In this document: positions 15,271 to 28,217 of the stretch, one piece after another
How positions within the stretch are numbered: position 1 is the stretch's first letter
How the letters are laid out: every line of letters starts with the position of its first letter
Virus record (IMG/VR): IMGVR_UViG_3300028920_000001
Span: 248,001-312,000 of that record
DNA: 64,000 bases
Direction: 5' to 3' (one strand)
The notes under the pieces: model-generated
Told to the model about the DNA's origin: nothing
Seen by the model: only the letters and a program-made list of their open reading frames with translations
Database searches by the model: none
Made by a program: the position numbers and the translations under genes

Positions 15271-16197
15271 TTGGCTAATTTAGTTATCATAAACGGGGAT
15301 GATGAATTCCTCAAAGAACGTGCTGCTTTAGATGAAGCGCATAATTTTTTAACGAATGATATAGACTGGTTTGATTATTCCAATCTTGATCGTTATCTAG
15401 ATGAATCTCAAATGGTTCCGTTGTCGGGGGAAGGTCGAATATTTATCATCCGAAATTCGAAAAAAGTACCAGAACTCCCATGTGGTGAAAATGATGTACT
15501 CATTCTAATATCGCATTCTCAGCTTACCGATGGTAGAGCTAAACGAATACATAGTATAAAGGCGCTGAAAACTTTCGATAATAACAATGAAATCATTAAA
15601 TGGATTTTAGTTGAGGGTAGACGATCTAATATCGATTTATCTAGAGTCGCTGGTGCTTTATATATCAATAATGGAAAACGCTTAAGGAAAATTCATTCTG
15701 AAATCCAAAAATTAATAGCATTAACTGAACCCGGTGATATTGTTTCTCCTGAAGTTGCTAGATCAGTGTTATGTTTTTCTGCTGATCTCACACCTAAACA
15801 AGTAGTGGATGCAATGATTGATGGTAATGCTAGATTAGCACTAGGTTATTACGATAAGCTACAAGAAAAAGCGGATGAGACTGGATGGATCATATCATAT
15901 ATGCAATTTCATGTGCTTCAACAACTAAGAATGGAAGAATTACATCGGAAAGGAGTGGAACATAACGATTCGGCAGCTAAACTTAGTGTTCACCCGTTTG
16001 TATACAAAAAGATGTTAGAAAAACGTTTGGGACTGTGGACTTCAGAGTCTTTATTAAACAGTGTTTCTGCGCTCTGTGATCTCGATCTCGAACATAAGCG
16101 TGGCAACAAAGCAGCTCGATTAGGGTTGGAAGCAGAAATTATTAGACTGTCTGAGGAGTCAGGGAATGTCCAAAGAGTCAGTGGCACGAAAAACTGA
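15271..16197 (+). CDS. holA: Clamp-loader delta-like subunit
   Basis: IINGDDEFL, IHSEIQKL, LSVHPFVYKK, LCDLDLEHKRG..RLGLE. Confidence 0.8.
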   Translation: MANLVIINGDDEFLKERAALDEAHNFLTNDIDWFDYSNLDRYLDESQMVPLSGEGRIFIIRNSKKVPELPCGENDVLILISHSQLTDGRAKRIHSIKALKTFDNNNEIIKWILVEGRRSNIDLSRVAGALYINNGKRLRKIHSEIQKLIALTEPGDIVSPEVARSVLCFSADLTPKQVVDAMIDGNARLALGYYDKLQEKADETGWIISYMQFHVLQQLRMEELHRKGVEHNDSAAKLSVHPFVYKKMLEKRLGLWTSESLLNSVSALCDLDLEHKRGNKAARLGLEAEIIRLSEESGNVQRVSGTKN

Positions 16198-18955
16198 TAT
16201 CGAATCTCCTGGTGTCGCGACCTTAGAAAAAGTAGTGGGGATGCCGAAAGCCGGCAAAGAAGCTGGTACTTGGGAGCGTGTTTTTACTGTAGAAGGTGTA
16301 CATCCATTTGATGAAATAGAATGGAAGACAATAAATGCTAAAATCGTAGCTGAAAATGGTGAAATTAAATACGAGCAAAAAGATGTTGAATTTCCAATTT
16401 GGTGGCATCAGACCAATATTAATGTAGTAGCTAGTAAATATTTTCGTATTATTGATGGAGTTAAAGAAAATTCACTTAAACAAATTATAACTCGAGTAGC
16501 TAACGTTATTACGGATTGGGCTACTGAGCAAGAATACTTTAACACAGAGAATGACGCTAATATTTACAAGCAAGAATTAATTTATGCTTTGGTTCATCAA
16601 TATGGAGCTTTCAATTCTCCAGTATGGTTTAACTTAGGAGTACCTGGTCGTCGTCAAACAGCTAGTGCTTGTTTTATTCAAGGAATTTATGACTCATTAG
16701 ACTCAATACAGACTTTTCAACGTTCTGAACTTAGTATTTTTGCTAGTGGTTCTGGATCAGGTGCTAATTTTAGTGATCTTCGTTCTTCATATGAGAAGCT
16801 TTCATCTGGTGCATATGTGTCTGGTCCAATTGCATGGATGCGTCCTTTAGATCAGGCAGCTGGTGCTATGAAGTCAGGAGGATCCACCCGAAATGCGGCT
16901 AAAATGGTCGTTATGGATATGGATCATCCTGATATCATGGAAACGTTAGACGGTCGTCCAGGTTTCATTCGATGCAAGGCCGTTGAAGAGCAGCGAGCTC
17001 ATGACCTAATTGAGATGGGATATGGAACAGCTTATGATGATCCAAATTCTGCGTACAAGAATGTGATGTATCAGAATGCGAATCATTCGGTGAGTGTGCC
17101 TGATAATTTTATGAAGTCTGTTGAGTCCGATGGACAATGGGAGACTAAAGAACGATTAACTAATGAAACGGTTCATACTTATAAAGCTCGTGATTTATGG
17201 GATGAAATTGCTAAAGCAGCTTGGAAATGTGGAGACCCTGGAGTTCAATTTACTGATACTATCAATAACTGGCATACTACGCCGAAATCTGGGAAAATTC
17301 GTTCGAGTAATCCATGTAGTGAATTCTTACATGTTGACAATACGGCATGTAATTTATGTGGTCTAAATCTTAGCAAGTTTTTTCTTAATGGAGCTCCACT
17401 CGATGTTAAAGCTTTTGAACATGCAGTTCGTATTTTCGTGACTGCACAAAATGCTTTTGTGAATAAGGCTGAATATCCTACACCTGAGATTACTAAGAAC
17501 TCCCATATGCTGAGGCCAATTGGTCTTAATTATGGTGATTTGGGCGCCGTTATCATGAAGCTTGGGTACGCCTATGATTCAGATGAAGGACGTGCAGTAG
17601 CAGCACGTTTAGCTAGTTTGATGACAGGCTATGCTTATCTGTATTCATCTAAATTGGCCGCCCGTACTCAGGTATTTCCTGAGTATGAACGTAATAAGCA
17701 AGATATGTTGCGAGTCATGCGCATGCATCAGAAAGCTGATGCTGACATTTTGAATCGTTGGAACTTATCAGAAGATCCATTATCTGTTAGTGATAAATCA
17801 CAATCAGTTTGGGAACGAGTTAATGCTATTGGCGAGCGTCACGGATTCGCTAATTCTCAGACTACACTTCAAGCTCCGCTTGGCACGATTTCATTTCTCA
17901 TGGGAATGGATACTACCGGTATTGAACCAGCATTTTCGTTGGTATCATATAAATCACTTGTCGGTGGTGGCTTTGAAAAATTAGTTAATCACGCGGTAGA
18001 ACAAGCACTGCTGATGCTTGAGTATTCTGATGATCAAATCACGGAAATTAGGGATTATATTAATCAAAATGATTATATAGAAAAAGCTCCACATCTAAAA
18101 GAAGATCATTTATCAGTATTTGATTGTGCAGCTAACACAGGTCCATCAAAACGTCACATTTCAGCGATGGGTCATCTTAAGATGATGGCTGCCATTCAGC
18201 CACTCATTACCTGTGCTATGAGTAAGACAGTTAATTTACCAGAAGAAACAACTCCGGAGCAAATTGCTGAAACGTATATGGATAGTTGGAAGCTCGGTCT
18301 CAAGTGTGTGGCTCTTTATCGCAATGGGTCAAAGAAATCACAACCTTTGTCGAGTAAAAAAAATAATTTCAAAGAAGAAAGACCTTCAGGAATTCAAGAA
18401 GTAATTAAAGAGATTATTAAAGAGGTCCCTGCACCACGTCGAAAGCTGCCGGAGAATATCTCTGCTAAGCGGCATAAGTTTGTGATTGATGGTTCTAAGG
18501 GTTATTTAATTATGGGTGAATATGAGGATGGAACCTTAGGTGAAATCTTCATCCGATTCGGTAAGAACGGTTCTACGTTAAATGGTCTTATGGATGCGAA
18601 TACGCAATTAGCTAGTATTGCATTACAGCATGGTGTTCCACTTGAGAAGTTGATTCGTGCATTTATTAATACTAAGTTTGAGCCGGCTGGGTTTACTCAG
18701 AATCCCGACATCAGGTTTGCTACAAGTTTACTTGATTATGTTTTCAAATATCTTGATATCAGATACTGTGGTGGTCGAGTTTCAGGTTTAGATGCTCGTC
18801 TCTCCGATCAAGATCATGATATTTCTCATCCGAGTTCTGATCGTCCTAGTATGACGCCAGATGCTCCACCTTGTGTTCATTGCGGTTCTATTACTCGCCG
18901 GAATGGTTCTTGCTATTTATGTGAGACTTGTGGTAACACTTCGGGTTGTAGTTGA
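16166..18955 (+). CDS. nrdJ: Class II (B12-dependent) ribonucleotide reductase with C-terminal TSCPD/Zn domain
   Basis: FNSPVWFN, SACFI, TRNAAKM, SNPCSE, APLGTIS, SKTVNLP, CETCGNTSGCS. Confidence 0.95.
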   Translation: MSKESVARKTDIESPGVATLEKVVGMPKAGKEAGTWERVFTVEGVHPFDEIEWKTINAKIVAENGEIKYEQKDVEFPIWWHQTNINVVASKYFRIIDGVKENSLKQIITRVANVITDWATEQEYFNTENDANIYKQELIYALVHQYGAFNSPVWFNLGVPGRRQTASACFIQGIYDSLDSIQTFQRSELSIFASGSGSGANFSDLRSSYEKLSSGAYVSGPIAWMRPLDQAAGAMKSGGSTRNAAKMVVMDMDHPDIMETLDGRPGFIRCKAVEEQRAHDLIEMGYGTAYDDPNSAYKNVMYQNANHSVSVPDNFMKSVESDGQWETKERLTNETVHTYKARDLWDEIAKAAWKCGDPGVQFTDTINNWHTTPKSGKIRSSNPCSEFLHVDNTACNLCGLNLSKFFLNGAPLDVKAFEHAVRIFVTAQNAFVNKAEYPTPEITKNSHMLRPIGLNYGDLGAVIMKLGYAYDSDEGRAVAARLASLMTGYAYLYSSKLAARTQVFPEYERNKQDMLRVMRMHQKADADILNRWNLSEDPLSVSDKSQSVWERVNAIGERHGFANSQTTLQAPLGTISFLMGMDTTGIEPAFSLVSYKSLVGGGFEKLVNHAVEQALLMLEYSDDQITEIRDYINQNDYIEKAPHLKEDHLSVFDCAANTGPSKRHISAMGHLKMMAAIQPLITCAMSKTVNLPEETTPEQIAETYMDSWKLGLKCVALYRNGSKKSQPLSSKKNNFKEERPSGIQEVIKEIIKEVPAPRRKLPENISAKRHKFVIDGSKGYLIMGEYEDGTLGEIFIRFGKNGSTLNGLMDANTQLASIALQHGVPLEKLIRAFINTKFEPAGFTQNPDIRFATSLLDYVFKYLDIRYCGGRVSGLDARLSDQDHDISHPSSDRPSMTPDAPPCVHCGSITRRNGSCYLCETCGNTSGCS

Positions 18956-18967
18956 GTAAAATAAAAT

Positions 18968-19219
18968 ATGAAATTTGATAATGAACGGGATCGGAATGCC
19001 TACGGATATGATGCTGGAACAATTGTAGAAGGTGAGGTTCGTTGGAGTGAGTCTCTTAATCGATATGTAATTGTAGATGACGAAGACGTTGGATTTGATC
19101 CGAACGCTGTGCTTCAGAAATTAGATGGGATGAAAGTTCGATTTACATTGGTGAGTTTCGAAGCCATCGAAAATATAGAAAAAATGTTAGCGGTTGCTCA
19201 AACAGATGGCACTAACTAA
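18968..19219 (+). CDS. Hypothetical protein
   Basis: 83 aa; GTAAAAT-N5-ATG upstream. Confidence 0.65.
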   Translation: MKFDNERDRNAYGYDAGTIVEGEVRWSESLNRYVIVDDEDVGFDPNAVLQKLDGMKVRFTLVSFEAIENIEKMLAVAQTDGTN

Positions 19220-19248
19220 TATATGGAATAAAATCTTAATTCCCTATA

Positions 19249-20049
19249 TTGAATATGGGTAAAGAGAATTACTCCAGAATTCTTGAATTATATAAATCTG
19301 GATTATCTAAAAGAGAAATAAGAGAACAAGGATTTGGTTGGAATGAAGTAAAGAAAGCTTTGATTGGGAATACTAGGAGTCTCAAAGAAGTTGGCCGAAT
19401 TTATTCTGATAGGTATTTAGAAAAGAACACCCATGAATTGAATAAAAATCAACTTGATTTGATTTACGGGTCCTTACTCGGTGATTCAAGTTTGAGCAGG
19501 TATTCATATACTTTAATGTTTTCAAATACCCATTGTGACGCTCAATATGATTATTCTTTACATATGAAGAAAATATTACCTAGTGGGAATATTTATTCTA
19601 GGATTCAAAAGAGCGGATATAAAATCGGTGTACCAGTTCATTTCTTTTCATATCGAAATAAAGGAGCATTGATAAAAATATGGGATGTTGTGATGATTAA
19701 TAATAAGAAGACAGTGAATAAAAATTGGGTGGAGAGGATCAATAAAGAAGCTCTAGCTTATTGGTTTATGGATGATGGAACATCTTGTTATACTAAGCGT
19801 GAAACTGGCGTGTCTGTCACAATTCAATTTTCTACCTATTCTTTTTCATATTGTGAAAATTGTTTATTGAAGGAAAAACTGGAAGATTTTGGTATACGAT
19901 CTAATGTAAGGAATACTAAAAATGGTCATGTACTGGGGGTATCTAAACTGGATTCTGATAAACTGATTGAATTAATAAAGCCTACAATTGAAAAAGTTCC
20001 ATGCATGCAGTACAAACTCAAATTTACTAAACGTAAACCCCTTTTGTAA
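19249..20049 (+). mobile_element. Free-standing double-motif LAGLIDADG homing endonuclease with N-terminal HTH
   Basis: LIYGSLLGDSS and ALAYWFMDDG motifs; no intein ends. Confidence 0.85.
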
Positions 20050-21154
20050 GATTTCCTTCGCAGTACGGTATTACGTCATTCTTACGAGAAATGAGAACTT
20101 CGTCTCCTCTCGAGAGTTGAAGTTGGTTGAATATTTTAATATTATGGAGTGACACGTGAGTGATAGTTACTCCGCCAATGTGAACTGGTTCTAAGACAGC
20201 TACACCTGTGATACGTCCTGTAGGTCCAACCTGCCATTTAATATCTTTAATATTGGTGGTTCCCATTGCCGGATCAAATTTCCAAGCAATTTGTCCTCGA
20301 GGGCGCATATTGAGCTCACCGATTTCTTCTTGAGCCGGAATATTGTTGAGTCTGATTACGGTGCCGTCGATTTCGTATGGAATTTGATCTCTATTTTCAT
20401 GAATTCGGTGATGCCATTCAATCACTTTGTCTTGATCACCAACTAAATAAGGTGGGATCTCAAATTTCATTTTCTTTAAGACTTTAAATCGCTTTTCTTC
20501 TGAATCGGGTGCAGTTTCAGATATTAAGGTAAAGGCTACGAAGATTAGGTTTTTACAATCAGCTCCTTTATTTTTCTTATCCCTAACTTTGCCGGCTGCT
20601 GTATTTCGTGGATTTGCGTATTGATTCGAATAATATTGTTCAAAAGTTTTTTTGAGCATCATAATTTCACCGCGTACATGGATCCGTTCGCTAGTGATTG
20701 GGACAGACTTAGGGAGATTGGGAATTTGAATAATATTATATGTAACGTCTTCTCCTATTTTTCCATCTCCTCTAGTAACACCGCGAACTAAATTTCCTTT
20801 ATCATAAATTACTTCTAAGCTTGAACCATCTAATTTATAGGTAATTAACAATTCTTCAGGCTTAGTTTCACCATTTACTTCATTTTCAAGATCTACCACC
20901 CATTCAACGAAATCTTCTACTTCGTTGACCTTATTGAGGGATCCCATCGGGATTTCGTGTTGGATCTTCTCCCAAATTGAATGGGCTGAGGGAGTTGCCC
21001 CGATAGTAGTGACTTCAAAATCCTGTGGGGCTAATTGTCTGAGTTTATCAATTTTAGCATCATATTCTTGATCGGATAAAGTTGGAGTGAGATTATAATA
21101 GGCTTCTCGAGCTTCTTTCAGTTCTTTCTGGAGTTTTTTAATTTCTGAATCCAT
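20027..21154 (-). CDS. ligA: NAD-dependent DNA ligase, N-terminal part (Ia, adenylation, OB domains)
   Basis: YYN..P..SDQEYD, KLDG, TRGDG..GEDVT, VRGE, NPRNTAAG, EIDG, AWKF, NDVIP; start moved to ATG 21154 (GTATCTT-N5-ATG). Confidence 0.92.
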   Translation of the reverse strand: MDSEIKKLQKELKEAREAYYNLTPTLSDQEYDAKIDKLRQLAPQDFEVTTIGATPSAHSIWEKIQHEIPMGSLNKVNEVEDFVEWVVDLENEVNGETKPEELLITYKLDGSSLEVIYDKGNLVRGVTRGDGKIGEDVTYNIIQIPNLPKSVPITSERIHVRGEIMMLKKTFEQYYSNQYANPRNTAAGKVRDKKNKGADCKNLIFVAFTLISETAPDSEEKRFKVLKKMKFEIPPYLVGDQDKVIEWHHRIHENRDQIPYEIDGTVIRLNNIPAQEEIGELNMRPRGQIAWKFDPAMGTTNIKDIKWQVGPTGRITGVAVLEPVHIGGVTITHVSLHNIKIFNQLQLSRGDEVLISRKNDVIPYCEGNLTKGVYV

Positions 21155-21187
21155 ATCTAAAGATACATTGGTCAATAGGCCTTTGGT

Positions 21188-21814
21188 ATGGATGTGGATC
21201 TGAATATGACTCACTACAATATTGCCAAAGTTGCCTCTGAAATTGCCAATGACCCTAAACTAGAGGTGGTTTCTAAGCCAACTCATCTAGCAAAGGTGGC
21301 TACAGAGGTTCAGCAGAATCTTAAAATAGCTGCATCTAAGGACCAAGATGCTGAATGGCATCGGGTAAATTCCTATATTGCTGATATTTTAAAGGATGCT
21401 CATGTTCTTTATGCCAAGTTAGCTCGTCTTCAGAGTGATTTTTCGGATGTAGAACTGGCTAAGTTAGAAAAGATTTCTGAGCGGGTTTTAGAATTAGGTG
21501 AGCAGCTATCACAATTCTCGAAAGGATTTTATGAGGGCAAAATTGAAATGGTGAAGGAATTTTCTTATTCTGGCCCTGGTGGTTCAGCTCAATTGGAAGT
21601 ATCTAAAGAAGAACCTGAATCTGCTGAAGAACCCACTGAAGCAGATCTGGATATCGAATTAGACTTAGAAGGTGAATCTGATTTCTCCGATTATGAGGAA
21701 GAAGAGTCTGAAGGAGAGCCTAAAGAAGCCAGCTCTTCTGGTGAAGGCCGTGGTGAAGGTGGAGAAGGCGGCGTAGAAGAAGAAGACGGGAAGAAGGAAG
21801 AGGAAGAAGACTGA
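21188..21814 (+). CDS. Acidic-tailed protein with leader-like IAKVASEIA motif; possible virion internal protein
   Basis: N-terminal motif resembles the KIASRIAA family; E-rich tail. Confidence 0.6.
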   Translation: MDVDLNMTHYNIAKVASEIANDPKLEVVSKPTHLAKVATEVQQNLKIAASKDQDAEWHRVNSYIADILKDAHVLYAKLARLQSDFSDVELAKLEKISERVLELGEQLSQFSKGFYEGKIEMVKEFSYSGPGGSAQLEVSKEEPESAEEPTEADLDIELDLEGESDFSDYEEEESEGEPKEASSSGEGRGEGGEGGVEEEDGKKEEEED

Positions 21815-21833
21815 TACATTGTAAATTCAATGT

Positions 21834-22628
21834 ATGTCAGAGTTTTTTCGTATTCCTGAGTCGTGTCCTGTATGTGGCCGTCCGACGTCTTTAGAAGGCG
21901 ATTTTCTTTTTTGTAGAAATAGGTCTTGCCCAGCCAAATTAACGGGTTCTATTCAAGTTTGGGTAAAACAATTAGGATTACTTCATTGGGGGGATGCCTT
22001 AATCGAGGCTTTAACCAATCCGGATGATCCTAAAATTGAATCTGTAGCAGATTTATATAGATTGTCTGTTGAAGATATTGCTACTTGTTGTTCTGGGATG
22101 AAGGTAGCTCAAAAATGTTATGATGTTCTGCATGCAAATAAAGAAATAGCATTGGAATTATTGCTTGCCTCTCTTAATATTCCTAATTTTGGTTTAGCTA
22201 CCGCTACTGATGTAGTTCAGGCTGGATTTAATACTGTCGACAAGATAATATCTATGACTTATAGTGATTTGCTTAAAGTACCTAATGTTGGTGAAAAGAC
22301 TGCTGAGCAAGTCATTCAGGGTCTCATGTTGAGATTGGAATTAATTAAGGATCTCGAACAGGTTTTAAATATTAAAGAACCTCAGTCGGGTGGTTCTCTT
22401 CAGGGCAAGTCATTTTGTATTACTGGTGAGCTTTCGAAGCCTCGGAAAGCTGTGGAAAAAATGATATTGGATGCAGGTGGCCTGGCTAAGAGTTCGGTTA
22501 CTAAAACATTATCATACTTGGTAACAAATGACTCTGCCACTACATCAGGTAAGATGAAGAAAGCGCAAAAATATGGAGTATCGATTATCAATGAACAGGA
22601 TTTATATAATTTATTAAATGCAAATTAA
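21834..22628 (+). CDS. ligA: NAD-dependent DNA ligase, C-terminal part (Zn finger, HhH, BRCT)
   Basis: CPVCG..C.N..CPA, ADLYRL, LNIPNFG, VPNVGEKTA, BRCT GKSFCITGEL..SVTK..YLV..K.KKA.KYGV.IINE. Confidence 0.92.
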   Translation: MSEFFRIPESCPVCGRPTSLEGDFLFCRNRSCPAKLTGSIQVWVKQLGLLHWGDALIEALTNPDDPKIESVADLYRLSVEDIATCCSGMKVAQKCYDVLHANKEIALELLLASLNIPNFGLATATDVVQAGFNTVDKIISMTYSDLLKVPNVGEKTAEQVIQGLMLRLELIKDLEQVLNIKEPQSGGSLQGKSFCITGELSKPRKAVEKMILDAGGLAKSSVTKTLSYLVTNDSATTSGKMKKAQKYGVSIINEQDLYNLLNAN

Positions 22629-22652
22629 TTTGTTAATGTAATTTAGTATAAC

Positions 22653-24911
22653 GTGGATGAATTAGTATGCAAGATCGATGGGGTGGTATTTTCTAATCGT
22701 GGTACTGGGTTTTTCATACTTAAAGCCAAAGATGGTTCTGGTTCAAAAGTTTCCATAAAAGGAACTTTTCCTGGATTAAATTTAAATATTGGTGTTAAAG
22801 CTAAATTTTGTGGTAATTATGAGATTCATCCTACTTATGGTAAGCAATTAATTGCTCAATCTTGTGAGCTTCTTCCTGAAAAGGGAAGAAATGGAACTAT
22901 TACTTATTTAATTAATAATGTTCCTTCAATCGGGCCTATTACTGCAGCCAAGCTTTATAGTGTCTTTGGTGATGAACTTTTGAATGTTTTAGAAAATGAA
23001 TCAGATAAAATTTTAGAGCTAGATTTTCTTACTCGAGCTCAATCCAATGCTATTTTAACAGAATGGAAGAAATCTTCTGAATTACGAACAGTTGCTATTT
23101 TTCTTACTGATTTGGGTCTTAATGCAGCTCAAGTAAGGTCGGTTTATTCTAAATTTGGGATTGATACTACTCAAAGGGTTAAGGACAATCCATATATTTT
23201 ATATGAGTGTTCTAACATTGGGTTTATGACTGCTGATTCTGCTGCCCGTACTTTAGGTATTGGCGTTGATGATATCAGACGAGTTCGGGCTATGATTCTT
23301 TATATCATGTCTGAATTGTCTTTATCAGAAGGACACATATATGTTACTTCTAAGCAAATCAACGATTATGTAAAGAAAATTTTTAATCGTACTTCACTTG
23401 ATTCTTTTTCTCATGGTGAATATATTGCTGAGTCCCATTATTATGAAGCTCTAACTGATTTAATTAAACAAGGTGATGTTGTATCTAAACAGAATCGTCT
23501 ATACCTTGCTCCTCATTGGGTTTATGAAAGTATGTCTGCTGAGTATCTTAGTGGTATGATAACCAAAACTCCTCGAGTATTTGGAAATTTTCAGAAATTT
23601 TTATCAGATTTCGAAAAGAATCGAAATTTGACTTTATCGGATGAGCAAAAAGAAGCTTTCTTTGCTTTAGAACACTCCCAGGTTTGTGTTGTTTCTGGTT
23701 TTCCTGGTACCGGAAAGACTCTTCTTACTTCTGCTTTTGTTCACTTATTTGAGGAAGCGCGATTACATTATGTATTAATGTCACCTACCGGTATCGCTGC
23801 TAAGCGGCTGTCACAGGTTACAGGTAAGCCTGCTTTTACCATTCACCGTGCTTTAGGATATGGTCGTGATGGGACTTGGGAATTTTCAGCTTCTAACCGA
23901 TTTTATTCAGATGCGATTATTGTTGATGAGATGTCGATGGTAGATAGTTCTACTTTTTACCATTTAATTTCTGCTTTAGATCCGTCTACTATTCTTGTTT
24001 TAATCGGTGATGTTGCTCAGTTGCCATCAGTTGGCGCAGGCTATGTTTTAAATAATCTTATGAATTGTGAAGACGTACCCTGTGTTTCATTAACTAAAAT
24101 CTTTAGACAAGAGAAACAATCTGACATTGTCACTGTTGCTCATTCTATTCTAGCTGGTGAGCCTGTTGATACAACTTTTAAGCCTGAATCAGAGTTTCTT
24201 TTCTTGCCATTTGAACAAGATAAAATTTTAGGTGAAGTTTGTAAAATCACCTCTAGAATGAAGGAAAAAAGCACAAATTTCCAGGTGATTGCTCCTACTT
24301 ACAATGGAGACTTGGGAGTTGATAATTTGAATAAGGAGCTTCGTACAGTCCTGAATTCAAGATTCGCAAAAAGTAAAGCTAATAAATTAAAGTTACGTTT
24401 AGGTGAAAATTCCTCGAAGGAAATATACGAGGGCGATCGTGTGATGGTAGTGAGAAATGACTATGATCGAATGATATTTAATGGGGACGTAGGAAAAGTT
24501 GAGCGGATTTCTCTTAGAGACGACGAAGTTCAGGTCAGGATTTTTGAATGGTTTAATCAAGATATTATCAATCCGACTTATGAAGATAAGATTTTCAAAT
24601 TCACAGTTGAAGAAGCGATGCATGTTTTAAGAGTGGCTTTTGCCTGCACTACTCATAAAGTTCAAGGTCAGGAATTTGATTATGTAATCATGCCTATGAC
24701 TATGAAGTACGGCATCATGCTGTATCGAAATCTAATTTATACTGCTCTTACTCGAGCCAAGAAAAAGGCATTTATATTTGGTGATCCATCAGCATTCCAA
24801 TTTGCAATTGGTAATAATAGAGAAACTATTCGAAATTCAGCATTGTCTGAATTAATCCATTCCCATATTGAATCTCAGGATGAGAGTATGAATAAATGTT
24901 CTTCAATGTAA
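22653..24911 (+). CDS. recD2: RecD2-like SF1B helicase
   Basis: HPTYGKQ, IGPITA, GFPGTGKT, SPTGIAAKRL, VDEMSM, GDVAQLPSVG, THKVQGQE, YTALTRAK. Confidence 0.93.
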   Translation: MDELVCKIDGVVFSNRGTGFFILKAKDGSGSKVSIKGTFPGLNLNIGVKAKFCGNYEIHPTYGKQLIAQSCELLPEKGRNGTITYLINNVPSIGPITAAKLYSVFGDELLNVLENESDKILELDFLTRAQSNAILTEWKKSSELRTVAIFLTDLGLNAAQVRSVYSKFGIDTTQRVKDNPYILYECSNIGFMTADSAARTLGIGVDDIRRVRAMILYIMSELSLSEGHIYVTSKQINDYVKKIFNRTSLDSFSHGEYIAESHYYEALTDLIKQGDVVSKQNRLYLAPHWVYESMSAEYLSGMITKTPRVFGNFQKFLSDFEKNRNLTLSDEQKEAFFALEHSQVCVVSGFPGTGKTLLTSAFVHLFEEARLHYVLMSPTGIAAKRLSQVTGKPAFTIHRALGYGRDGTWEFSASNRFYSDAIIVDEMSMVDSSTFYHLISALDPSTILVLIGDVAQLPSVGAGYVLNNLMNCEDVPCVSLTKIFRQEKQSDIVTVAHSILAGEPVDTTFKPESEFLFLPFEQDKILGEVCKITSRMKEKSTNFQVIAPTYNGDLGVDNLNKELRTVLNSRFAKSKANKLKLRLGENSSKEIYEGDRVMVVRNDYDRMIFNGDVGKVERISLRDDEVQVRIFEWFNQDIINPTYEDKIFKFTVEEAMHVLRVAFACTTHKVQGQEFDYVIMPMTMKYGIMLYRNLIYTALTRAKKKAFIFGDPSAFQFAIGNNRETIRNSALSELIHSHIESQDESMNKCSSM

Positions 24912-24930
24912 AAATATATAGGAGAACATA

Positions 24931-25929
24931 TTGTCTGAGTTTAGATTTGTTACTTCATCCGATGAACATCTTGCTGATCTAAGTCCTGGATTCAGGAAGG
25001 ATGGATATCGGAATGCCATATTTCGAAAATTAGAGTGGCAAGGTAAGTTCGCTAAAAAATTCGGGGCTGATGCTCTTTTACGAGGTGGGGACTTTTTCCA
25101 CGTTCGGGCGGCTAATAAGACCACTATGGCCACCTTGGCCGAAGCTGCTAGAATACATCGTCGATACCCCTGTCGCACTTATGCTTTGGCTGGTAACCAT
25201 GATATGTGTTATGGTGACCCTGATACTATAGCGAAGCAACCACTTGGAGTGATGATTGAATCTAAATCTTTCTGGCCTCTTCGAGATGAATATTTTATCC
25301 ATGGATCAATGAGGGTCAGAGTTATCGGTGTTGAATACACTCCTGATTTGGATTATGATGGATTAGCTAGTATGATCCGAAAGAAGGATGGGGATACTTA
25401 TACTATTGCTGTTGTTCACGCTTTAGCTGCTAATTCACCTGAGAAGAAAATGGAGGCATTTTTCGGTGAGAGAATATTTGATTATCGGGATTTAGTATTT
25501 CAGGGGTGTCCTGATGTCTATATCTTTGGTCATTATCACAAAGACCAAGGAATTCAAGAACATTTAGGTGTTCAGTTTGTGAATTTAGGTGCTATTTCAC
25601 GTGGTGCTTTGACTTTTGAAAATTTGAGTCGCGTTCCCAAGATATCATCGATTATATGTAGTTCTCAAGGAATTTCAATTGAGGAGCACATAGTTCCTCA
25701 TGATGACGCCTCGGAAGTTTTTGACTTAGAGCGAAAACAACAATTGGATAAAGAAAGGCGGTCTTTTGATAGTTTCTTAGAGAAATTAAAGACGAATGCT
25801 CAGTTGTCTTCTGATGGAGGTGTTAAGGAGTATTTAGCTAAATTTCAAGAATCTGATTATCCTGCCGACTTGAAACGTGTTGTGGTTGAAACCTTAGAAG
25901 CTGCTGAAGCTGGTGTCTTAGAAGAATGA
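24931..25929 (+). CDS. sbcD: SbcD/Mre11-like metallophosphoesterase nuclease
   Basis: SDEH, GGDFFH, GNHD, VVH, GHYH motifs. Confidence 0.85.
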   Translation: MSEFRFVTSSDEHLADLSPGFRKDGYRNAIFRKLEWQGKFAKKFGADALLRGGDFFHVRAANKTTMATLAEAARIHRRYPCRTYALAGNHDMCYGDPDTIAKQPLGVMIESKSFWPLRDEYFIHGSMRVRVIGVEYTPDLDYDGLASMIRKKDGDTYTIAVVHALAANSPEKKMEAFFGERIFDYRDLVFQGCPDVYIFGHYHKDQGIQEHLGVQFVNLGAISRGALTFENLSRVPKISSIICSSQGISIEEHIVPHDDASEVFDLERKQQLDKERRSFDSFLEKLKTNAQLSSDGGVKEYLAKFQESDYPADLKRVVVETLEAAEAGVLEE

Positions 25930-27094: not shown

Positions 27095-28217
27095 GTTTCA
27101 CTTCAAATCTGATGTTTTGAAGATGGGATTAGCTTTGGCTAGGTTAGTAAAGCCAGAATCTGGAAGTGGTATAAAAGGAGATTATTGTTTTAAATTTTTA
27201 CCGAATTCTTTGGTTATTTTTTCTTATGATAAACGTCGGTTTGTAAGAGCTTCTATTGCATGTGAAGCAGAGATCGATGAGCAATTTGAATCTGATGAAT
27301 TTTATTTATTACCAGATCGAACGGCATTATTTGATGTTGACCTGGAGAATATAACGGCTACATTAAATGCTAAATCTCTTTCAATTAAAGTATATGGCGA
27401 TGGTAAATCACGTCAAGCTAATCTCAAGAGACGTTCTGCGCAGTCTCGTCGTCCATCAGTTCCGGGATTTCCTGATTCTGAATATATTTCTGTTAATCGG
27501 ATAAACTTAGAATCAGCTTTACACCAAGTATCATGTTCTGCTTTGGTAAAAGAAACCAAAACTGAAGAAGATATGAGGATTAATCAGGTTCATTTCTATC
27601 CGGAACATAATTGTATTGTTTCTAGTACTAGATATTATGGTTCTGTTGTTCAACTTAATGAGCCTATTGGATTGGATGTTTCTATTGTAAGTGCTGACAT
27701 TCCTGCTATTCGTGGATTCTTGAACAAGATAAAATCTGATTGTGTGCAAATTTGTCAGGATGACAGGAATTTTAGCGTAATTGATCCTAATACTGAATCT
27801 TATTTATCAGTTGGGAAAGTTGCAACCAATAAGCCTAAATTTGATGTTTTAGATAAGGATAGATTTCAAACTTGTCTTCAGTTAGATTTAAAAACTCTAT
27901 CAAAGAATCTTGAATGGGCTTCTTTAGCAATTGAGGGTACTCAAAGGTTGGGGTTTCAGGCAGAACGAGAATCGGTTAAATTATTCAATGCTAAAGAAGA
28001 ATTAGCTGAAATTCCTGTTCAGTTTGTGCGTGGAGATAAACTAATTGCTGATTTTCCGGTTAGGTATTTACATATGATGGTGAAGCATCTCAGCAAAGAT
28101 CCTATACTTTATTATGATCATGAACGGGCCCCTAATATTCTTGGAGTTTCTCAGATTGATGATGAGGATCAACAAATTGATTTCATACATTTCTTACCAA
28201 GTATGAGGATGAGATGA
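27087..28217 (+). CDS. dnaN: Probable DNA sliding clamp (DnaN-like)
   Basis: 376 aa; INQVHF..IVSSTRYY like clamp domain II; C-terminal HFLPSMR; DnaX/HolA/HolB in the window. Divergent. Confidence 0.6.
   Translation: MPKFHFKSDVLKMGLALARLVKPESGSGIKGDYCFKFLPNSLVIFSYDKRRFVRASIACEAEIDEQFESDEFYLLPDRTALFDVDLENITATLNAKSLSIKVYGDGKSRQANLKRRSAQSRRPSVPGFPDSEYISVNRINLESALHQVSCSALVKETKTEEDMRINQVHFYPEHNCIVSSTRYYGSVVQLNEPIGLDVSIVSADIPAIRGFLNKIKSDCVQICQDDRNFSVIDPNTESYLSVGKVATNKPKFDVLDKDRFQTCLQLDLKTLSKNLEWASLAIEGTQRLGFQAERESVKLFNAKEELAEIPVQFVRGDKLIADFPVRYLHMMVKHLSKDPILYYDHERAPNILGVSQIDDEDQQIDFIHFLPSMRMR

What the first reader, a model, noticed from the sequence alone, without database searches (positions are those of the whole stretch)
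19249..22628. NAD-dependent ligase split into two divergently transcribed genes without an intein
Seen: the catalytic half (minus strand) stops just after motif VI (NDVIPY). The Zn-HhH-BRCT half (plus strand) starts right at the Zn finger (RIPESCPVCG). The break is in the domain linker with little or no loss. Both halves are intact, each has its own leaderless -10 element, and neither has intein motifs. A LAGLIDADG gene overlaps the broken 3' end by 23 bp. Inverting ~19240-21830 would give ligN-HEG-ligC, like the endonuclease-split nrdA of phage Aeh1. Inference: a two-subunit LigA assembled in trans.
Basis: partly seen in the sequence, partly recalled or inferred. Interest (0 to 1): 0.75.

Follow-up and report, generated by a model that had tools for sequence, protein, structure and literature searches.

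The report
Inversion-split two-gene phage DNA ligase
A 427-kb marine-sediment phage encodes its NAD-dependent DNA ligase as two back-to-back genes made by inverting the front half; two-piece ligases are already known from phage T5, but this inverted layout, which has switched to and from the one-piece form several times among relatives, is new.

Summary
ligN (20027-21154, minus; Ia+NTase+OB) ends 11 residues after motif VI. ligC (21834-22628, plus; Zn finger+HhH+BRCT) starts 10 residues before the first zinc cysteine. Together they tile a full-length LigA profile with about 5 positions missing. No intein or intron is present. A LAGLIDADG gene overlaps the ligN 3' end by 23 bp.

The layout is not a misassembly: 22 independent metagenomic relatives share it. 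Both halves are under purifying selection as strong as the neighbouring RecD2. A complex model supports OB/Zn-finger docking (0.69 against 0.00 for controls).

The endonuclease did not cause the split. It is present in only 3 of those loci and lies outside the inverted unit. Relatives with a one-piece LigA have acidic(-) then LigA(+), so inverting [acidic + ligN] reproduces the window.

Fused and inverted forms are interleaved on the tree, and AU tests reject a single origin of either. The state therefore changed at least 4 times.

Two-subunit LigA is already known: T5 subunits A/B split at the same linker, with solved structures 9hu3 and 9i5i. The window's split arose independently.

Verdict: a new variant of a known kind.

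The parts
18968..19219 (+). Conserved 83-aa gene of unknown function. It is the left neighbour of the rearranged block.
   Evidence: Homologs (42-58% identity) sit between the RNR gene and the ligase block in most relatives that hold this stretch, both inverted and fused; tblastn found none in L010.
19249..20049 (+). Free-standing LAGLIDADG homing endonuclease gene, a sporadic later insertion at the left junction.
   Evidence: Pfam LAGLIDADG_2, E 7e-21; phrog_11023. Homologs lie at the same place and orientation only in L021 (52% identity) and L101 (47% identity), and are absent from the other inverted and all fused loci. It is one of three LAGLIDADG_2 genes in the genome.
20027..20049 (.). 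23-bp convergent overlap of the HEG 3' end and the ligN 3' end. It lies at the left inversion junction.
   Evidence: ORF coordinates. The last residues of the ligN tail (TKGVYV) are encoded antisense to the HEG C-terminus.
20027..21154 (-). ligN, the catalytic subunit (domain Ia + nucleotidyltransferase + OB fold), 375 aa.
   Evidence: Pfam adenylation and OB domains. It aligns to E. coli LigA 8-386. Y19, Y20, D28, D32, K107, D109, G110, R161-E163, D263 and K292 are invariant across 15 homologs.
21155..21187 (.). 33-bp divergent intergenic region between the ligN and acidic-gene starts. Inferred to hold the shared control region, which moves with the cassette.
   Evidence: The divergent ligN/acidic pairing is kept in both inverted and fused relatives, with gaps of 53-72 bp in L010, L017, L101, L105 and L106 and 99 bp in L016. 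Promoter function was not tested.
21188..21814 (+). Conserved protein of unknown function: a helical hairpin followed by a disordered acidic tail. It lies between the ligase halves and inverts together with ligN.
   Evidence: No Pfam or PHROG hit. The core (about residues 55-115) is conserved across 11 loci. AlphaFold gives helices 33-82 and 88-115 with pLDDT above 90 there, and the tail below 50.
21815..21833 (.). 19-nt spacer between the acidic-gene stop and the ligC start. This is the right inversion junction. It holds a 6-bp stem (21816-21821 with 21828-21833).
   Evidence: Read directly from the sequence. No inverted repeat links it to the left junction.
21834..22628 (+). ligC, the DNA-binding subunit (Zn finger + HhH + BRCT), 264 aa.
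   Evidence: Pfam HHH_5, HHH_2 and BRCT. It aligns to Thermus filiformis LigA 400-658 and to T5-type subunit B, 9hu3_B.
22653..24911 (+). RecD2-like helicase, the conserved right neighbour. Used as the phylogenetic and selection yardstick.
   Evidence: Pfam; synteny.

Best explanation
The phage makes its NAD-dependent DNA ligase from two polypeptides.

- ligN (Ia + NTase + OB) carries out adenylylation and the nick-sealing chemistry.
- ligC (Zn finger + HhH + BRCT) supplies DNA binding.
- They are predicted to dock through the same OB/Zn-finger contact that is intramolecular in ordinary LigA, and to close around nicked DNA together.

The gene was not split by an intein, an intron or the endonuclease. 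A 1.8-kb cassette, made of the acidic gene, the divergent control region and the 5' 57% of ligA, was inverted. One breakpoint lay in the flexible OB/Zn linker. The other lay just past the 3' end of the acidic gene.

Because the control region travelled with the cassette, ligN stays expressed leftward. ligC now lies 19 nt behind the acidic gene and is presumably co-transcribed with it.

In this clade of jumbo phages the fused and inverted-split states have interchanged several times. The LAGLIDADG gene is a later, mobile passenger at the left junction.

Shown: domain content, synteny, conservation, the phylogenetic pattern, and the absence of repeats and recombinases.
Inferred: heterodimer activity, co-transcription, the direction of each switch, and its mechanism.
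For: 1. The halves tile the full LigA profile (7-383 and 389-652 of 656) and keep the catalytic and zinc residues.

2. The same layout, ligN(-) acidic(+) ligC(+) RecD2(+), occurs in 22 independent loci at 45-72% amino-acid identity. A Logan contig at depth 762 spans 18800-23000 colinearly.

3. dN is 0.12-0.35 with dS above 1 or saturated for ligN and ligC, the same as RecD2.

4. The five in-clade fused relatives (L010, L102, L103, L104, L107) have the acidic homolog on the minus strand upstream of a one-piece LigA(+) followed by RecD2 (directly adjacent in four; further upstream in L104). This is exactly the un-inverted form.

5. Complex model: ipSAE 0.69 against a best control of 0.00. That mark was reached by 51 of 78 solved complexes and 2 of 108 mismatched pairs. 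The interface is ligN 305-316 and 338-349 (OB) with ligC 2-42 (Zn finger).

6. Precedent: T5-type subunits A/B end and begin at the same linker. They are named as subunits in PMC3632103. They are solved as two chains in 9hu3 and 9i5i.

7. Recurrence: in the careful concatenated tree (ligN + ligC + RecD2), fused rows fall among inverted rows. (L101 inv, L010 fused) has 100/100 support and (L023 inv, L102 fused) has 100/99. Starred branches force at least 4 changes. AU tests reject all inverted rows as one clade (p 1e-62) and the five fused rows as one clade (p 9e-120).

8. The HEG is in 3 inverted loci only.
Against: - No biochemical data exist for this enzyme.
- The complex score may come from the model's memory of full-length LigA and 9hu3 structures.
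- The genome also has an ATP-type ligase-like gene (374 aa, with DNA_ligase_OB_2). The split LigA therefore need not be essential.
- No promoter was identified, and 33 bp is tight for two divergent promoters.
- The direction of the switches is unresolved: one inversion plus at least 4 re-fusions, or about 9 parallel inversions.
- No repeat or recombinase explains the recurrence.
- The groups tested by AU were named after the tree had been seen.
Confidence: 0.75

Rival explanations
1. One reading: the LAGLIDADG endonuclease split ligA, as mobE split nrdA in phage Aeh1, and a later inversion of about 19240-21830 separated the halves.
For: The HEG sits exactly at the left junction and overlaps the ligN 3' end. 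A distant lineage, L080, really does have ligN, then a TnsA-like endonuclease ORF, then ligC in one direction.
Against: The HEG is present in only 3 of 22 inverted loci and in no fused locus. Fused relatives show that the inverted unit is ligN plus the acidic gene, without any endonuclease. Undoing the proposed inversion would also put the HEG on the opposite strand to both halves.
Confidence: 0.06
2. The two genes no longer form one enzyme. ligN acts as a minimal stand-alone ligase or adenylyltransferase, and ligC acts as a separate DNA-binding or BRCT scaffold protein.
For: The halves are transcribed in opposite directions. L084 has a ligN with no ligC within 4.5 kb. An ATP-type ligase-like gene is also present.
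Against: ligN and ligC co-occur next to each other in every inverted locus examined. They evolve at matched rates. They are predicted to dock by the native OB/Zn interface. Lineages have apparently gone back to, or kept, the one-piece form, which implies the halves remain compatible. From prior knowledge, not tested here: LigA lacking its HhH domain does not seal nicks.
Confidence: 0.12
3. The cassette is an active, programmed invertible switch, like the Mu G segment or a shufflon, that toggles LigA between one-chain and two-chain forms within a phage population.
For: The state changed at least 4 times on the tree.
Against: There are no inverted repeats at the junctions in 16 loci (best z 2.0) or in the window. 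The genome has no serine or tyrosine recombinase. Inverted forms have fixed stop and start codons, so simple re-inversion would not restore an open frame. No alternative joint appears in the source-run contigs, although contigs drop rare variants.
Confidence: 0.04
4. Assembly artefact or decaying pseudogene.
For: None beyond the unusual layout.
Against: There are 22 independent assemblies with the same layout. A colinear contig at depth 762 spans the region. Frames and motifs are intact, and dN/dS is far below 1.
Confidence: 0.01

Closest known systems
Phage T5-type NAD-dependent DNA ligase subunits A and B (Demerecviridae; PDB 9hu3 and 9i5i; PHROGs 3359 and 3498)
   Same: LigA is cut in the same linker, a few residues after motif VI and a few before the first zinc cysteine. 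It is made as two proteins without an intein (PMC3632103).
   Different: The T5 genes are adjacent and codirectional, and subunit A is shorter (about 323 aa). The T5 lineage sits on a separate long branch outside the jumbo-phage LigA group, so the window's split is an independent event. Here the N half is inverted and a third gene lies between the halves.
Codirectional two-cistron LigA in a sister lineage (L016/L034)
   Same: Same clade, same linker, and the same neighbours (RNR, an upstream minus-strand acidic-like gene, RecD2).
   Different: ligN and ligC follow each other as TAA-A-ATG, with a GGAGG inside the last ligN codons. This is translational coupling, not inversion.
Endonuclease-split genes (Aeh1 nrdA/mobE; T4-type split topoisomerase genes). 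Recalled from the literature, not tested here.
   Same: An essential replication or nucleotide-metabolism enzyme is made from two polypeptides in a phage, with a homing endonuclease nearby.
   Different: In the window the endonuclease is not between the halves, is absent from most relatives, and is not needed to explain the split. A true ligN-endonuclease-ligC case exists in the unrelated locus L080.
Invertible DNA segments whose breakpoint lies inside a coding region (Mu G/Gin, P1 C/Cin). Recalled from the literature.
   Same: Inversion of a short segment changes what is joined to a constant coding part.
   Different: There are no flanking inverted repeats and no invertase. The changes are fixed differences between lineages, not a within-genome switch.
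One-piece bacterial LigA (E. coli 2owo; T. filiformis 1dgs)
   Same: All six domains are present and align end to end.
   Different: Here the chain is broken between the OB fold and the Zn finger.

Membership tests
NAD-dependent DNA ligase (LigA) | Domain Ia with conserved Tyr/Asp residues for NMN binding | tested here: met
   Y19, Y20, D28 and D32 are invariant in 15 homologs. The region aligns to E. coli LigA from residue 8.
NAD-dependent DNA ligase (LigA) | Nucleotidyltransferase domain with the KxDG lysine and motifs III-V | tested here: met
   PF01653, E 1e-53. K107, D109, G110, R161-E163, D263 and K292 are invariant.
NAD-dependent DNA ligase (LigA) | OB fold with motif VI | tested here: met
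   PF03120, positions 1-70 of 79. R357, N359, I362 and P363 are invariant.
NAD-dependent DNA ligase (LigA) | Tetracysteine Zn finger, HhH domain and BRCT domain | tested here: met
   C11, C14, C27 and C32 are read in ligC. HHH_5, HHH_2 and BRCT hit in Pfam. ligC aligns to 1dgs 400-658.
NAD-dependent DNA ligase (LigA) | All domains on one polypeptide | tested here: not met
   Two ORFs lie on opposite strands with a stop after the OB fold.
NAD-dependent DNA ligase (LigA) | NAD-dependent nick sealing | not testable with these tools
   Needs an enzyme assay.
T5-type two-subunit LigA (subunits A/B) | Break between motif VI and the Zn finger | tested here: met
   T5-like subunit A ends ...GGVIPCIVERVD and subunit B starts MKIEIPTQCPSCG. 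The window has ...NDVIPY+11 and MSEFFRIPESCPVCG.
T5-type two-subunit LigA (subunits A/B) | Adjacent codirectional genes | tested here: not met
   ligN is on the minus strand, and a 208-aa gene lies between the halves.
T5-type two-subunit LigA (subunits A/B) | Common descent with T5 subunits | tested here: not met
   T5-like subunit A sequences form a separate long branch. The window clade nests among fused jumbo-phage LigAs. This was a quick tree with long branches, so support is moderate.
T5-type two-subunit LigA (subunits A/B) | Stable A:B complex | tested here: inconclusive
   The model score is 0.69 against a best control of 0.00. That mark was reached by 51 of 78 solved complexes and 2 of 108 mismatched pairs. 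The score may reflect memory of solved LigA structures.
Endonuclease-split gene (Aeh1 nrdA type) | Endonuclease ORF inserted between the two halves | tested here: not met
   The HEG lies outside the halves and is absent from 19 of 22 inverted loci and from all fused ones.
Split intein / intein-containing gene | Hint splicing blocks at the break | tested here: not met
   No Hint or intein Pfam hit in either half. The halves abut the native linker.
Group I/II intron-split or trans-spliced gene | Intron RNA structure at the break | tested here: not met
   No Rfam match at E up to 1 in 18800-22800.
Site-specific invertible segment (Gin/Hin/Cin type) | Inverted repeats at both ends and a cognate recombinase | tested here: not met
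   No junction inverted repeat exceeds shuffles in 16 loci. There is no PF00239 or PF00589 match in the genome.

The most novel reading that the evidence does not exclude
The [acidic gene - control region - ligN] cassette is a recurrently flipping module. Selection repeatedly moves these jumbo phages between a one-chain and a two-chain ligase. The always-linked acidic helical protein may be a functional partner of the ligase, for example a third subunit, a regulator or a DNA mimic. The homing endonuclease at the junction may supply the breaks that drive the flips.
Probability: 0.12. Interest if true: 0.8.

Novelty: new variant of a known kind. Interest (0 to 1): 0.55.

Why it matters
This is a natural, replicated experiment in gene fission and fusion. 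An essential six-domain enzyme tolerates being cut at one linker, and an inversion rather than a mobile element did the cutting here. The one-piece and two-piece forms have replaced each other several times in one virus clade.

That gives three things:
- matched natural pairs, such as L101 with L010 and L023 with L102, for asking what a covalent linker contributes to LigA;
- evidence that the OB/Zn linker is the generally permissive split site, used independently by T5-like phages, this clade and several others;
- a caution for annotation pipelines, which label such halves as truncated ligases or miss that two genes on opposite strands make one enzyme.

Tried and rejected
- **Misassembly.** Rejected by 22 independent loci and a colinear contig at depth 762. 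Only contigs, not raw reads, were available, so rare orientation variants could not be excluded.
- **Intein or intron.** No Hint domains and no Rfam hit.
- **Promoters.** Consensus hits are not above shuffles, so no claim is made.
- **Junction inverted repeats.** None in the window or in 16 relatives.
- **Recombinases in the genome.** None found.
- **Pairwise dN/dS.** dS is above 1 or saturated in every pair, so only an upper bound (far below 1) can be given.
- **Nucleotide comparison of the closest inverted/fused pair (L101 and L010).** The sequences are too diverged to place breakpoints to the base. Homology ends within a few nucleotides after the acidic-gene stop.
- **Acidic protein.** No Pfam, PHROG or Atlas lead. 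The model is a generic helical hairpin, so no fold search was run.
- **HEG relatives in IMG/VR, searched with the single protein.** Only one distant hit.
- **Literature searches for a paper behind 9hu3 or on split or heterodimeric T5 ligase.** Nothing found in the held library.
- **First scan with ligN alone.** It found no loci. An alignment query was needed.
Full report
**What is there**

The window is part of a 426,960-bp virus record with direct terminal repeats. A near-identical contig occurs in a marine-sediment metagenome run. Almost all genes run on the plus strand. The region reads as follows:

| Feature | Coordinates | Strand |
|---|---|---|
| Class II RNR | 16166-18955 | + |
| 83-aa gene | 18968-19219 | + |
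| LAGLIDADG_2 endonuclease | 19249-20049 | + |
| ligN | 20027-21154 | - |
| 208-aa acidic protein | 21188-21814 | + |
| ligC | 21834-22628 | + |
| RecD2-like helicase | 22653-24911 | + |
| Mre11-like phosphoesterase | 24931-25929 | + |

ligN has the LigA adenylation and OB domains. ligC has HhH and BRCT domains and a CxxC...CxxxxC zinc finger at residues 11-32. Against the full-length PHROG LigA profile, ligN covers positions 7-383 and ligC covers 389-652 of 656. ligN aligns to E. coli LigA 8-386. ligC aligns to Thermus filiformis LigA 400-658. The break is therefore in the OB/Zn linker, with essentially nothing lost.

There are no intein domains and no Rfam family in the region. The genome has only one LigA adenylation domain. 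It also has an ATP-type ligase-like gene and a small NTase gene elsewhere.

**Is it real and maintained?**

A Logan contig at depth 762 spans 18800-23000 colinearly, with no alternative joints.

The order ligN(-) acidic(+) ligC(+) RecD2(+) recurs in IMG/VR loci L019-L033 and L035 and in the assemblies L017, L101, L105 and L106. L014 holds the ligN side of the same layout. Amino-acid identity to the window ranges from 45 to 72%.

Catalytic residues are invariant across 15 homologs. Pairwise dN is 0.12-0.35 with dS above 1 or saturated for ligN and ligC, the same as for RecD2. Neither half shows relaxed selection.

A complex prediction scored ipSAE 0.69 against a best control of 0.00. In calibration that mark was reached by 51 of 78 solved complexes and 2 of 108 mismatched pairs. 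The contact is between the OB fold (ligN 305-316, 338-349) and the Zn finger (ligC 2-42). This supports binding but does not show it, and it may reflect the model's memory of solved LigA structures.

**How the split arose**

The closest representative of ligN in a 1.8-billion-protein library is a one-piece 654-aa LigA, P0003 (59% identity). It was found in four assemblies. Its locus reads RNR(+), two small genes (+), acidic homolog(-), LigA(+), RecD2(+).

Four more one-piece relatives (L102, L103, L104, L107) also carry the acidic homolog on the minus strand upstream of LigA(+) followed by RecD2. It is the adjacent gene in all but L104, where extra genes lie between. Inverting [acidic(-) + control region + ligN part of LigA(+)] gives exactly the window's layout. 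The inverted unit is therefore about 20027-21830. The endonuclease gene lies outside it.

Homologs of the endonuclease occur at the same spot, convergent with ligN and overlapping its 3' end, only in L021 and L101. It is one of three LAGLIDADG_2 genes in this genome. It is best read as a mobile passenger that homes to the left junction. In the window it has rewritten the last few codons of the dispensable ligN tail.

A sister lineage (L016/L034) has the halves codirectional, joined as TAA-A-ATG with a Shine-Dalgarno-like GGAGG inside the last ligN codons.

**Recurrence**

A search with P0003 found about 80 N-only proteins (362-412 aa) and 8 one-piece proteins in the clade. In a FastTree of the N part, one-piece forms fall at six or more separate places among N-only forms.

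A careful IQ-TREE of concatenated ligN + ligC + RecD2 used 31 rows and 1358 columns. It gave these placements:
- (L101 inverted, L010 fused), support 100/100;
- (L023 inverted, L102 fused), support 100/99;
- L107 fused inside an 8-row clade, support 96/91.

Starred branches force at least 4 changes, and the best tree needs 6. AU tests reject all inverted rows as one clade (delta lnL 477, p 1e-62). They also reject the five in-clade fused rows as one clade (p 9e-120). The groups were named after seeing the tree, but the margins are very large. Single-gene trees of ligN, ligC and RecD2 agree for L010.

Parsimony favours one old inversion plus four or five re-fusions over about nine parallel inversions. 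Linker lengths fit this reading. Outgroup LigAs have 17-18 residues between motif VI and the first cysteine. The two best-supported derived fusions have 25 and 28, roughly a ligN tail plus a ligC head. The direction of each event remains an inference.

No inverted repeats flank the cassette in the window or in 16 relatives. The genome has no serine or tyrosine recombinase. Inverted forms carry fixed stop and start codons. A programmed switch is therefore unlikely. The simplest reading is rare illegitimate inversions, filtered by selection because only breakpoints in this linker leave a working enzyme.

**What is already known**

T5-like phages annotate LigA subunits A and B (PMC3632103). Subunit A ends a few residues after motif VI, and subunit B starts a few residues before the zinc finger. 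A T5-type pair has been solved as two chains in PDB entries 9hu3 and 9i5i. PHROGs holds separate half-size families.

On a tree the T5-type subunit A sequences form a distant long branch. N-only forms also appear in several other clades among fused LigAs. About 22 of the 150 nearest 50%-identity representatives are N-only proteins that end 6-33 residues after motif VI. One distant locus, L080, has ligN, a TnsA-like endonuclease and ligC in a row. Splitting LigA at this linker is thus recurrent in phages.

What is new here is the inversion mechanism, the divergent layout with a conserved third gene between the halves, and the repeated interchange with the fused form.

**Verdict**

The two-subunit reading is supported. 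The endonuclease-split reading is not. This is a new variant of a known kind. It is of moderate interest as a natural fission/fusion series and offers good material for enzymology.

Noticed in passing
L080:4459-7024: A distant jumbo-phage lineage has ligN, then immediately a 230-aa TnsA-like endonuclease ORF (PF08722, 26.9 bits), then ligC, all on one strand. This is a true endonuclease-between-halves split of LigA.
   Followed up: partly
L084:4381-5601: A ligN-only gene that ends 8 residues after motif VI, with no ligC-like sequence within 4.5 kb on either side.
   Followed up: no
L016:7080-7100 (same as L034): A codirectional two-cistron LigA in a sister lineage. The ligN stop and ligC start form TAA-A-ATG, with GGAGG inside the last ligN codons. 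This suggests translational coupling.
   Followed up: partly
window:21188-21814: A conserved helical-hairpin protein with a disordered acidic tail, of no known family. It is paired divergently with ligN or LigA in every relative, whichever way the cassette points.
   Followed up: partly
G000:C1 about 204446-205570 and 350287-350937 (L100, L099): The same phage also encodes a 374-aa ATP-type DNA-ligase-like protein (DNA_ligase_OB_2 plus part of DNA_ligase_A_M) and a 216-aa ligase/capping-type nucleotidyltransferase.
   Followed up: partly
window:51465-54224: A 919-aa ORF carrying an intein (Hint plus a LAGLIDADG_3 endonuclease domain). The host protein was not identified.
   Followed up: no
window:54000-58000: A block with GC 0.51 against about 0.38 elsewhere. 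It holds four ORFs (181-422 aa) with no Pfam match.
   Followed up: no
L010:2836-6855; L003:326-1434; L006:8553-8788: Relatives carry insertions in neighbouring replication genes. L010's RNR has an intein with a LAGLIDADG_3 domain. L003's RNR has a gap of about 1.1 kb. L006's RecD2 has a gap of about 230 bp. The window's copies are uninterrupted.
   Followed up: no
G000:C1:160323-160778 and 27492-28007 (L109, L110): Two further LAGLIDADG_2 endonuclease genes elsewhere in the genome.
   Followed up: no
L104:1040-2908: In one fused relative, a 622-aa gene with a weak restriction-endonuclease-like match (MTES_1575, below the Pfam cut-off) and a 157-aa gene are inserted between the acidic gene and LigA.
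   Followed up: no
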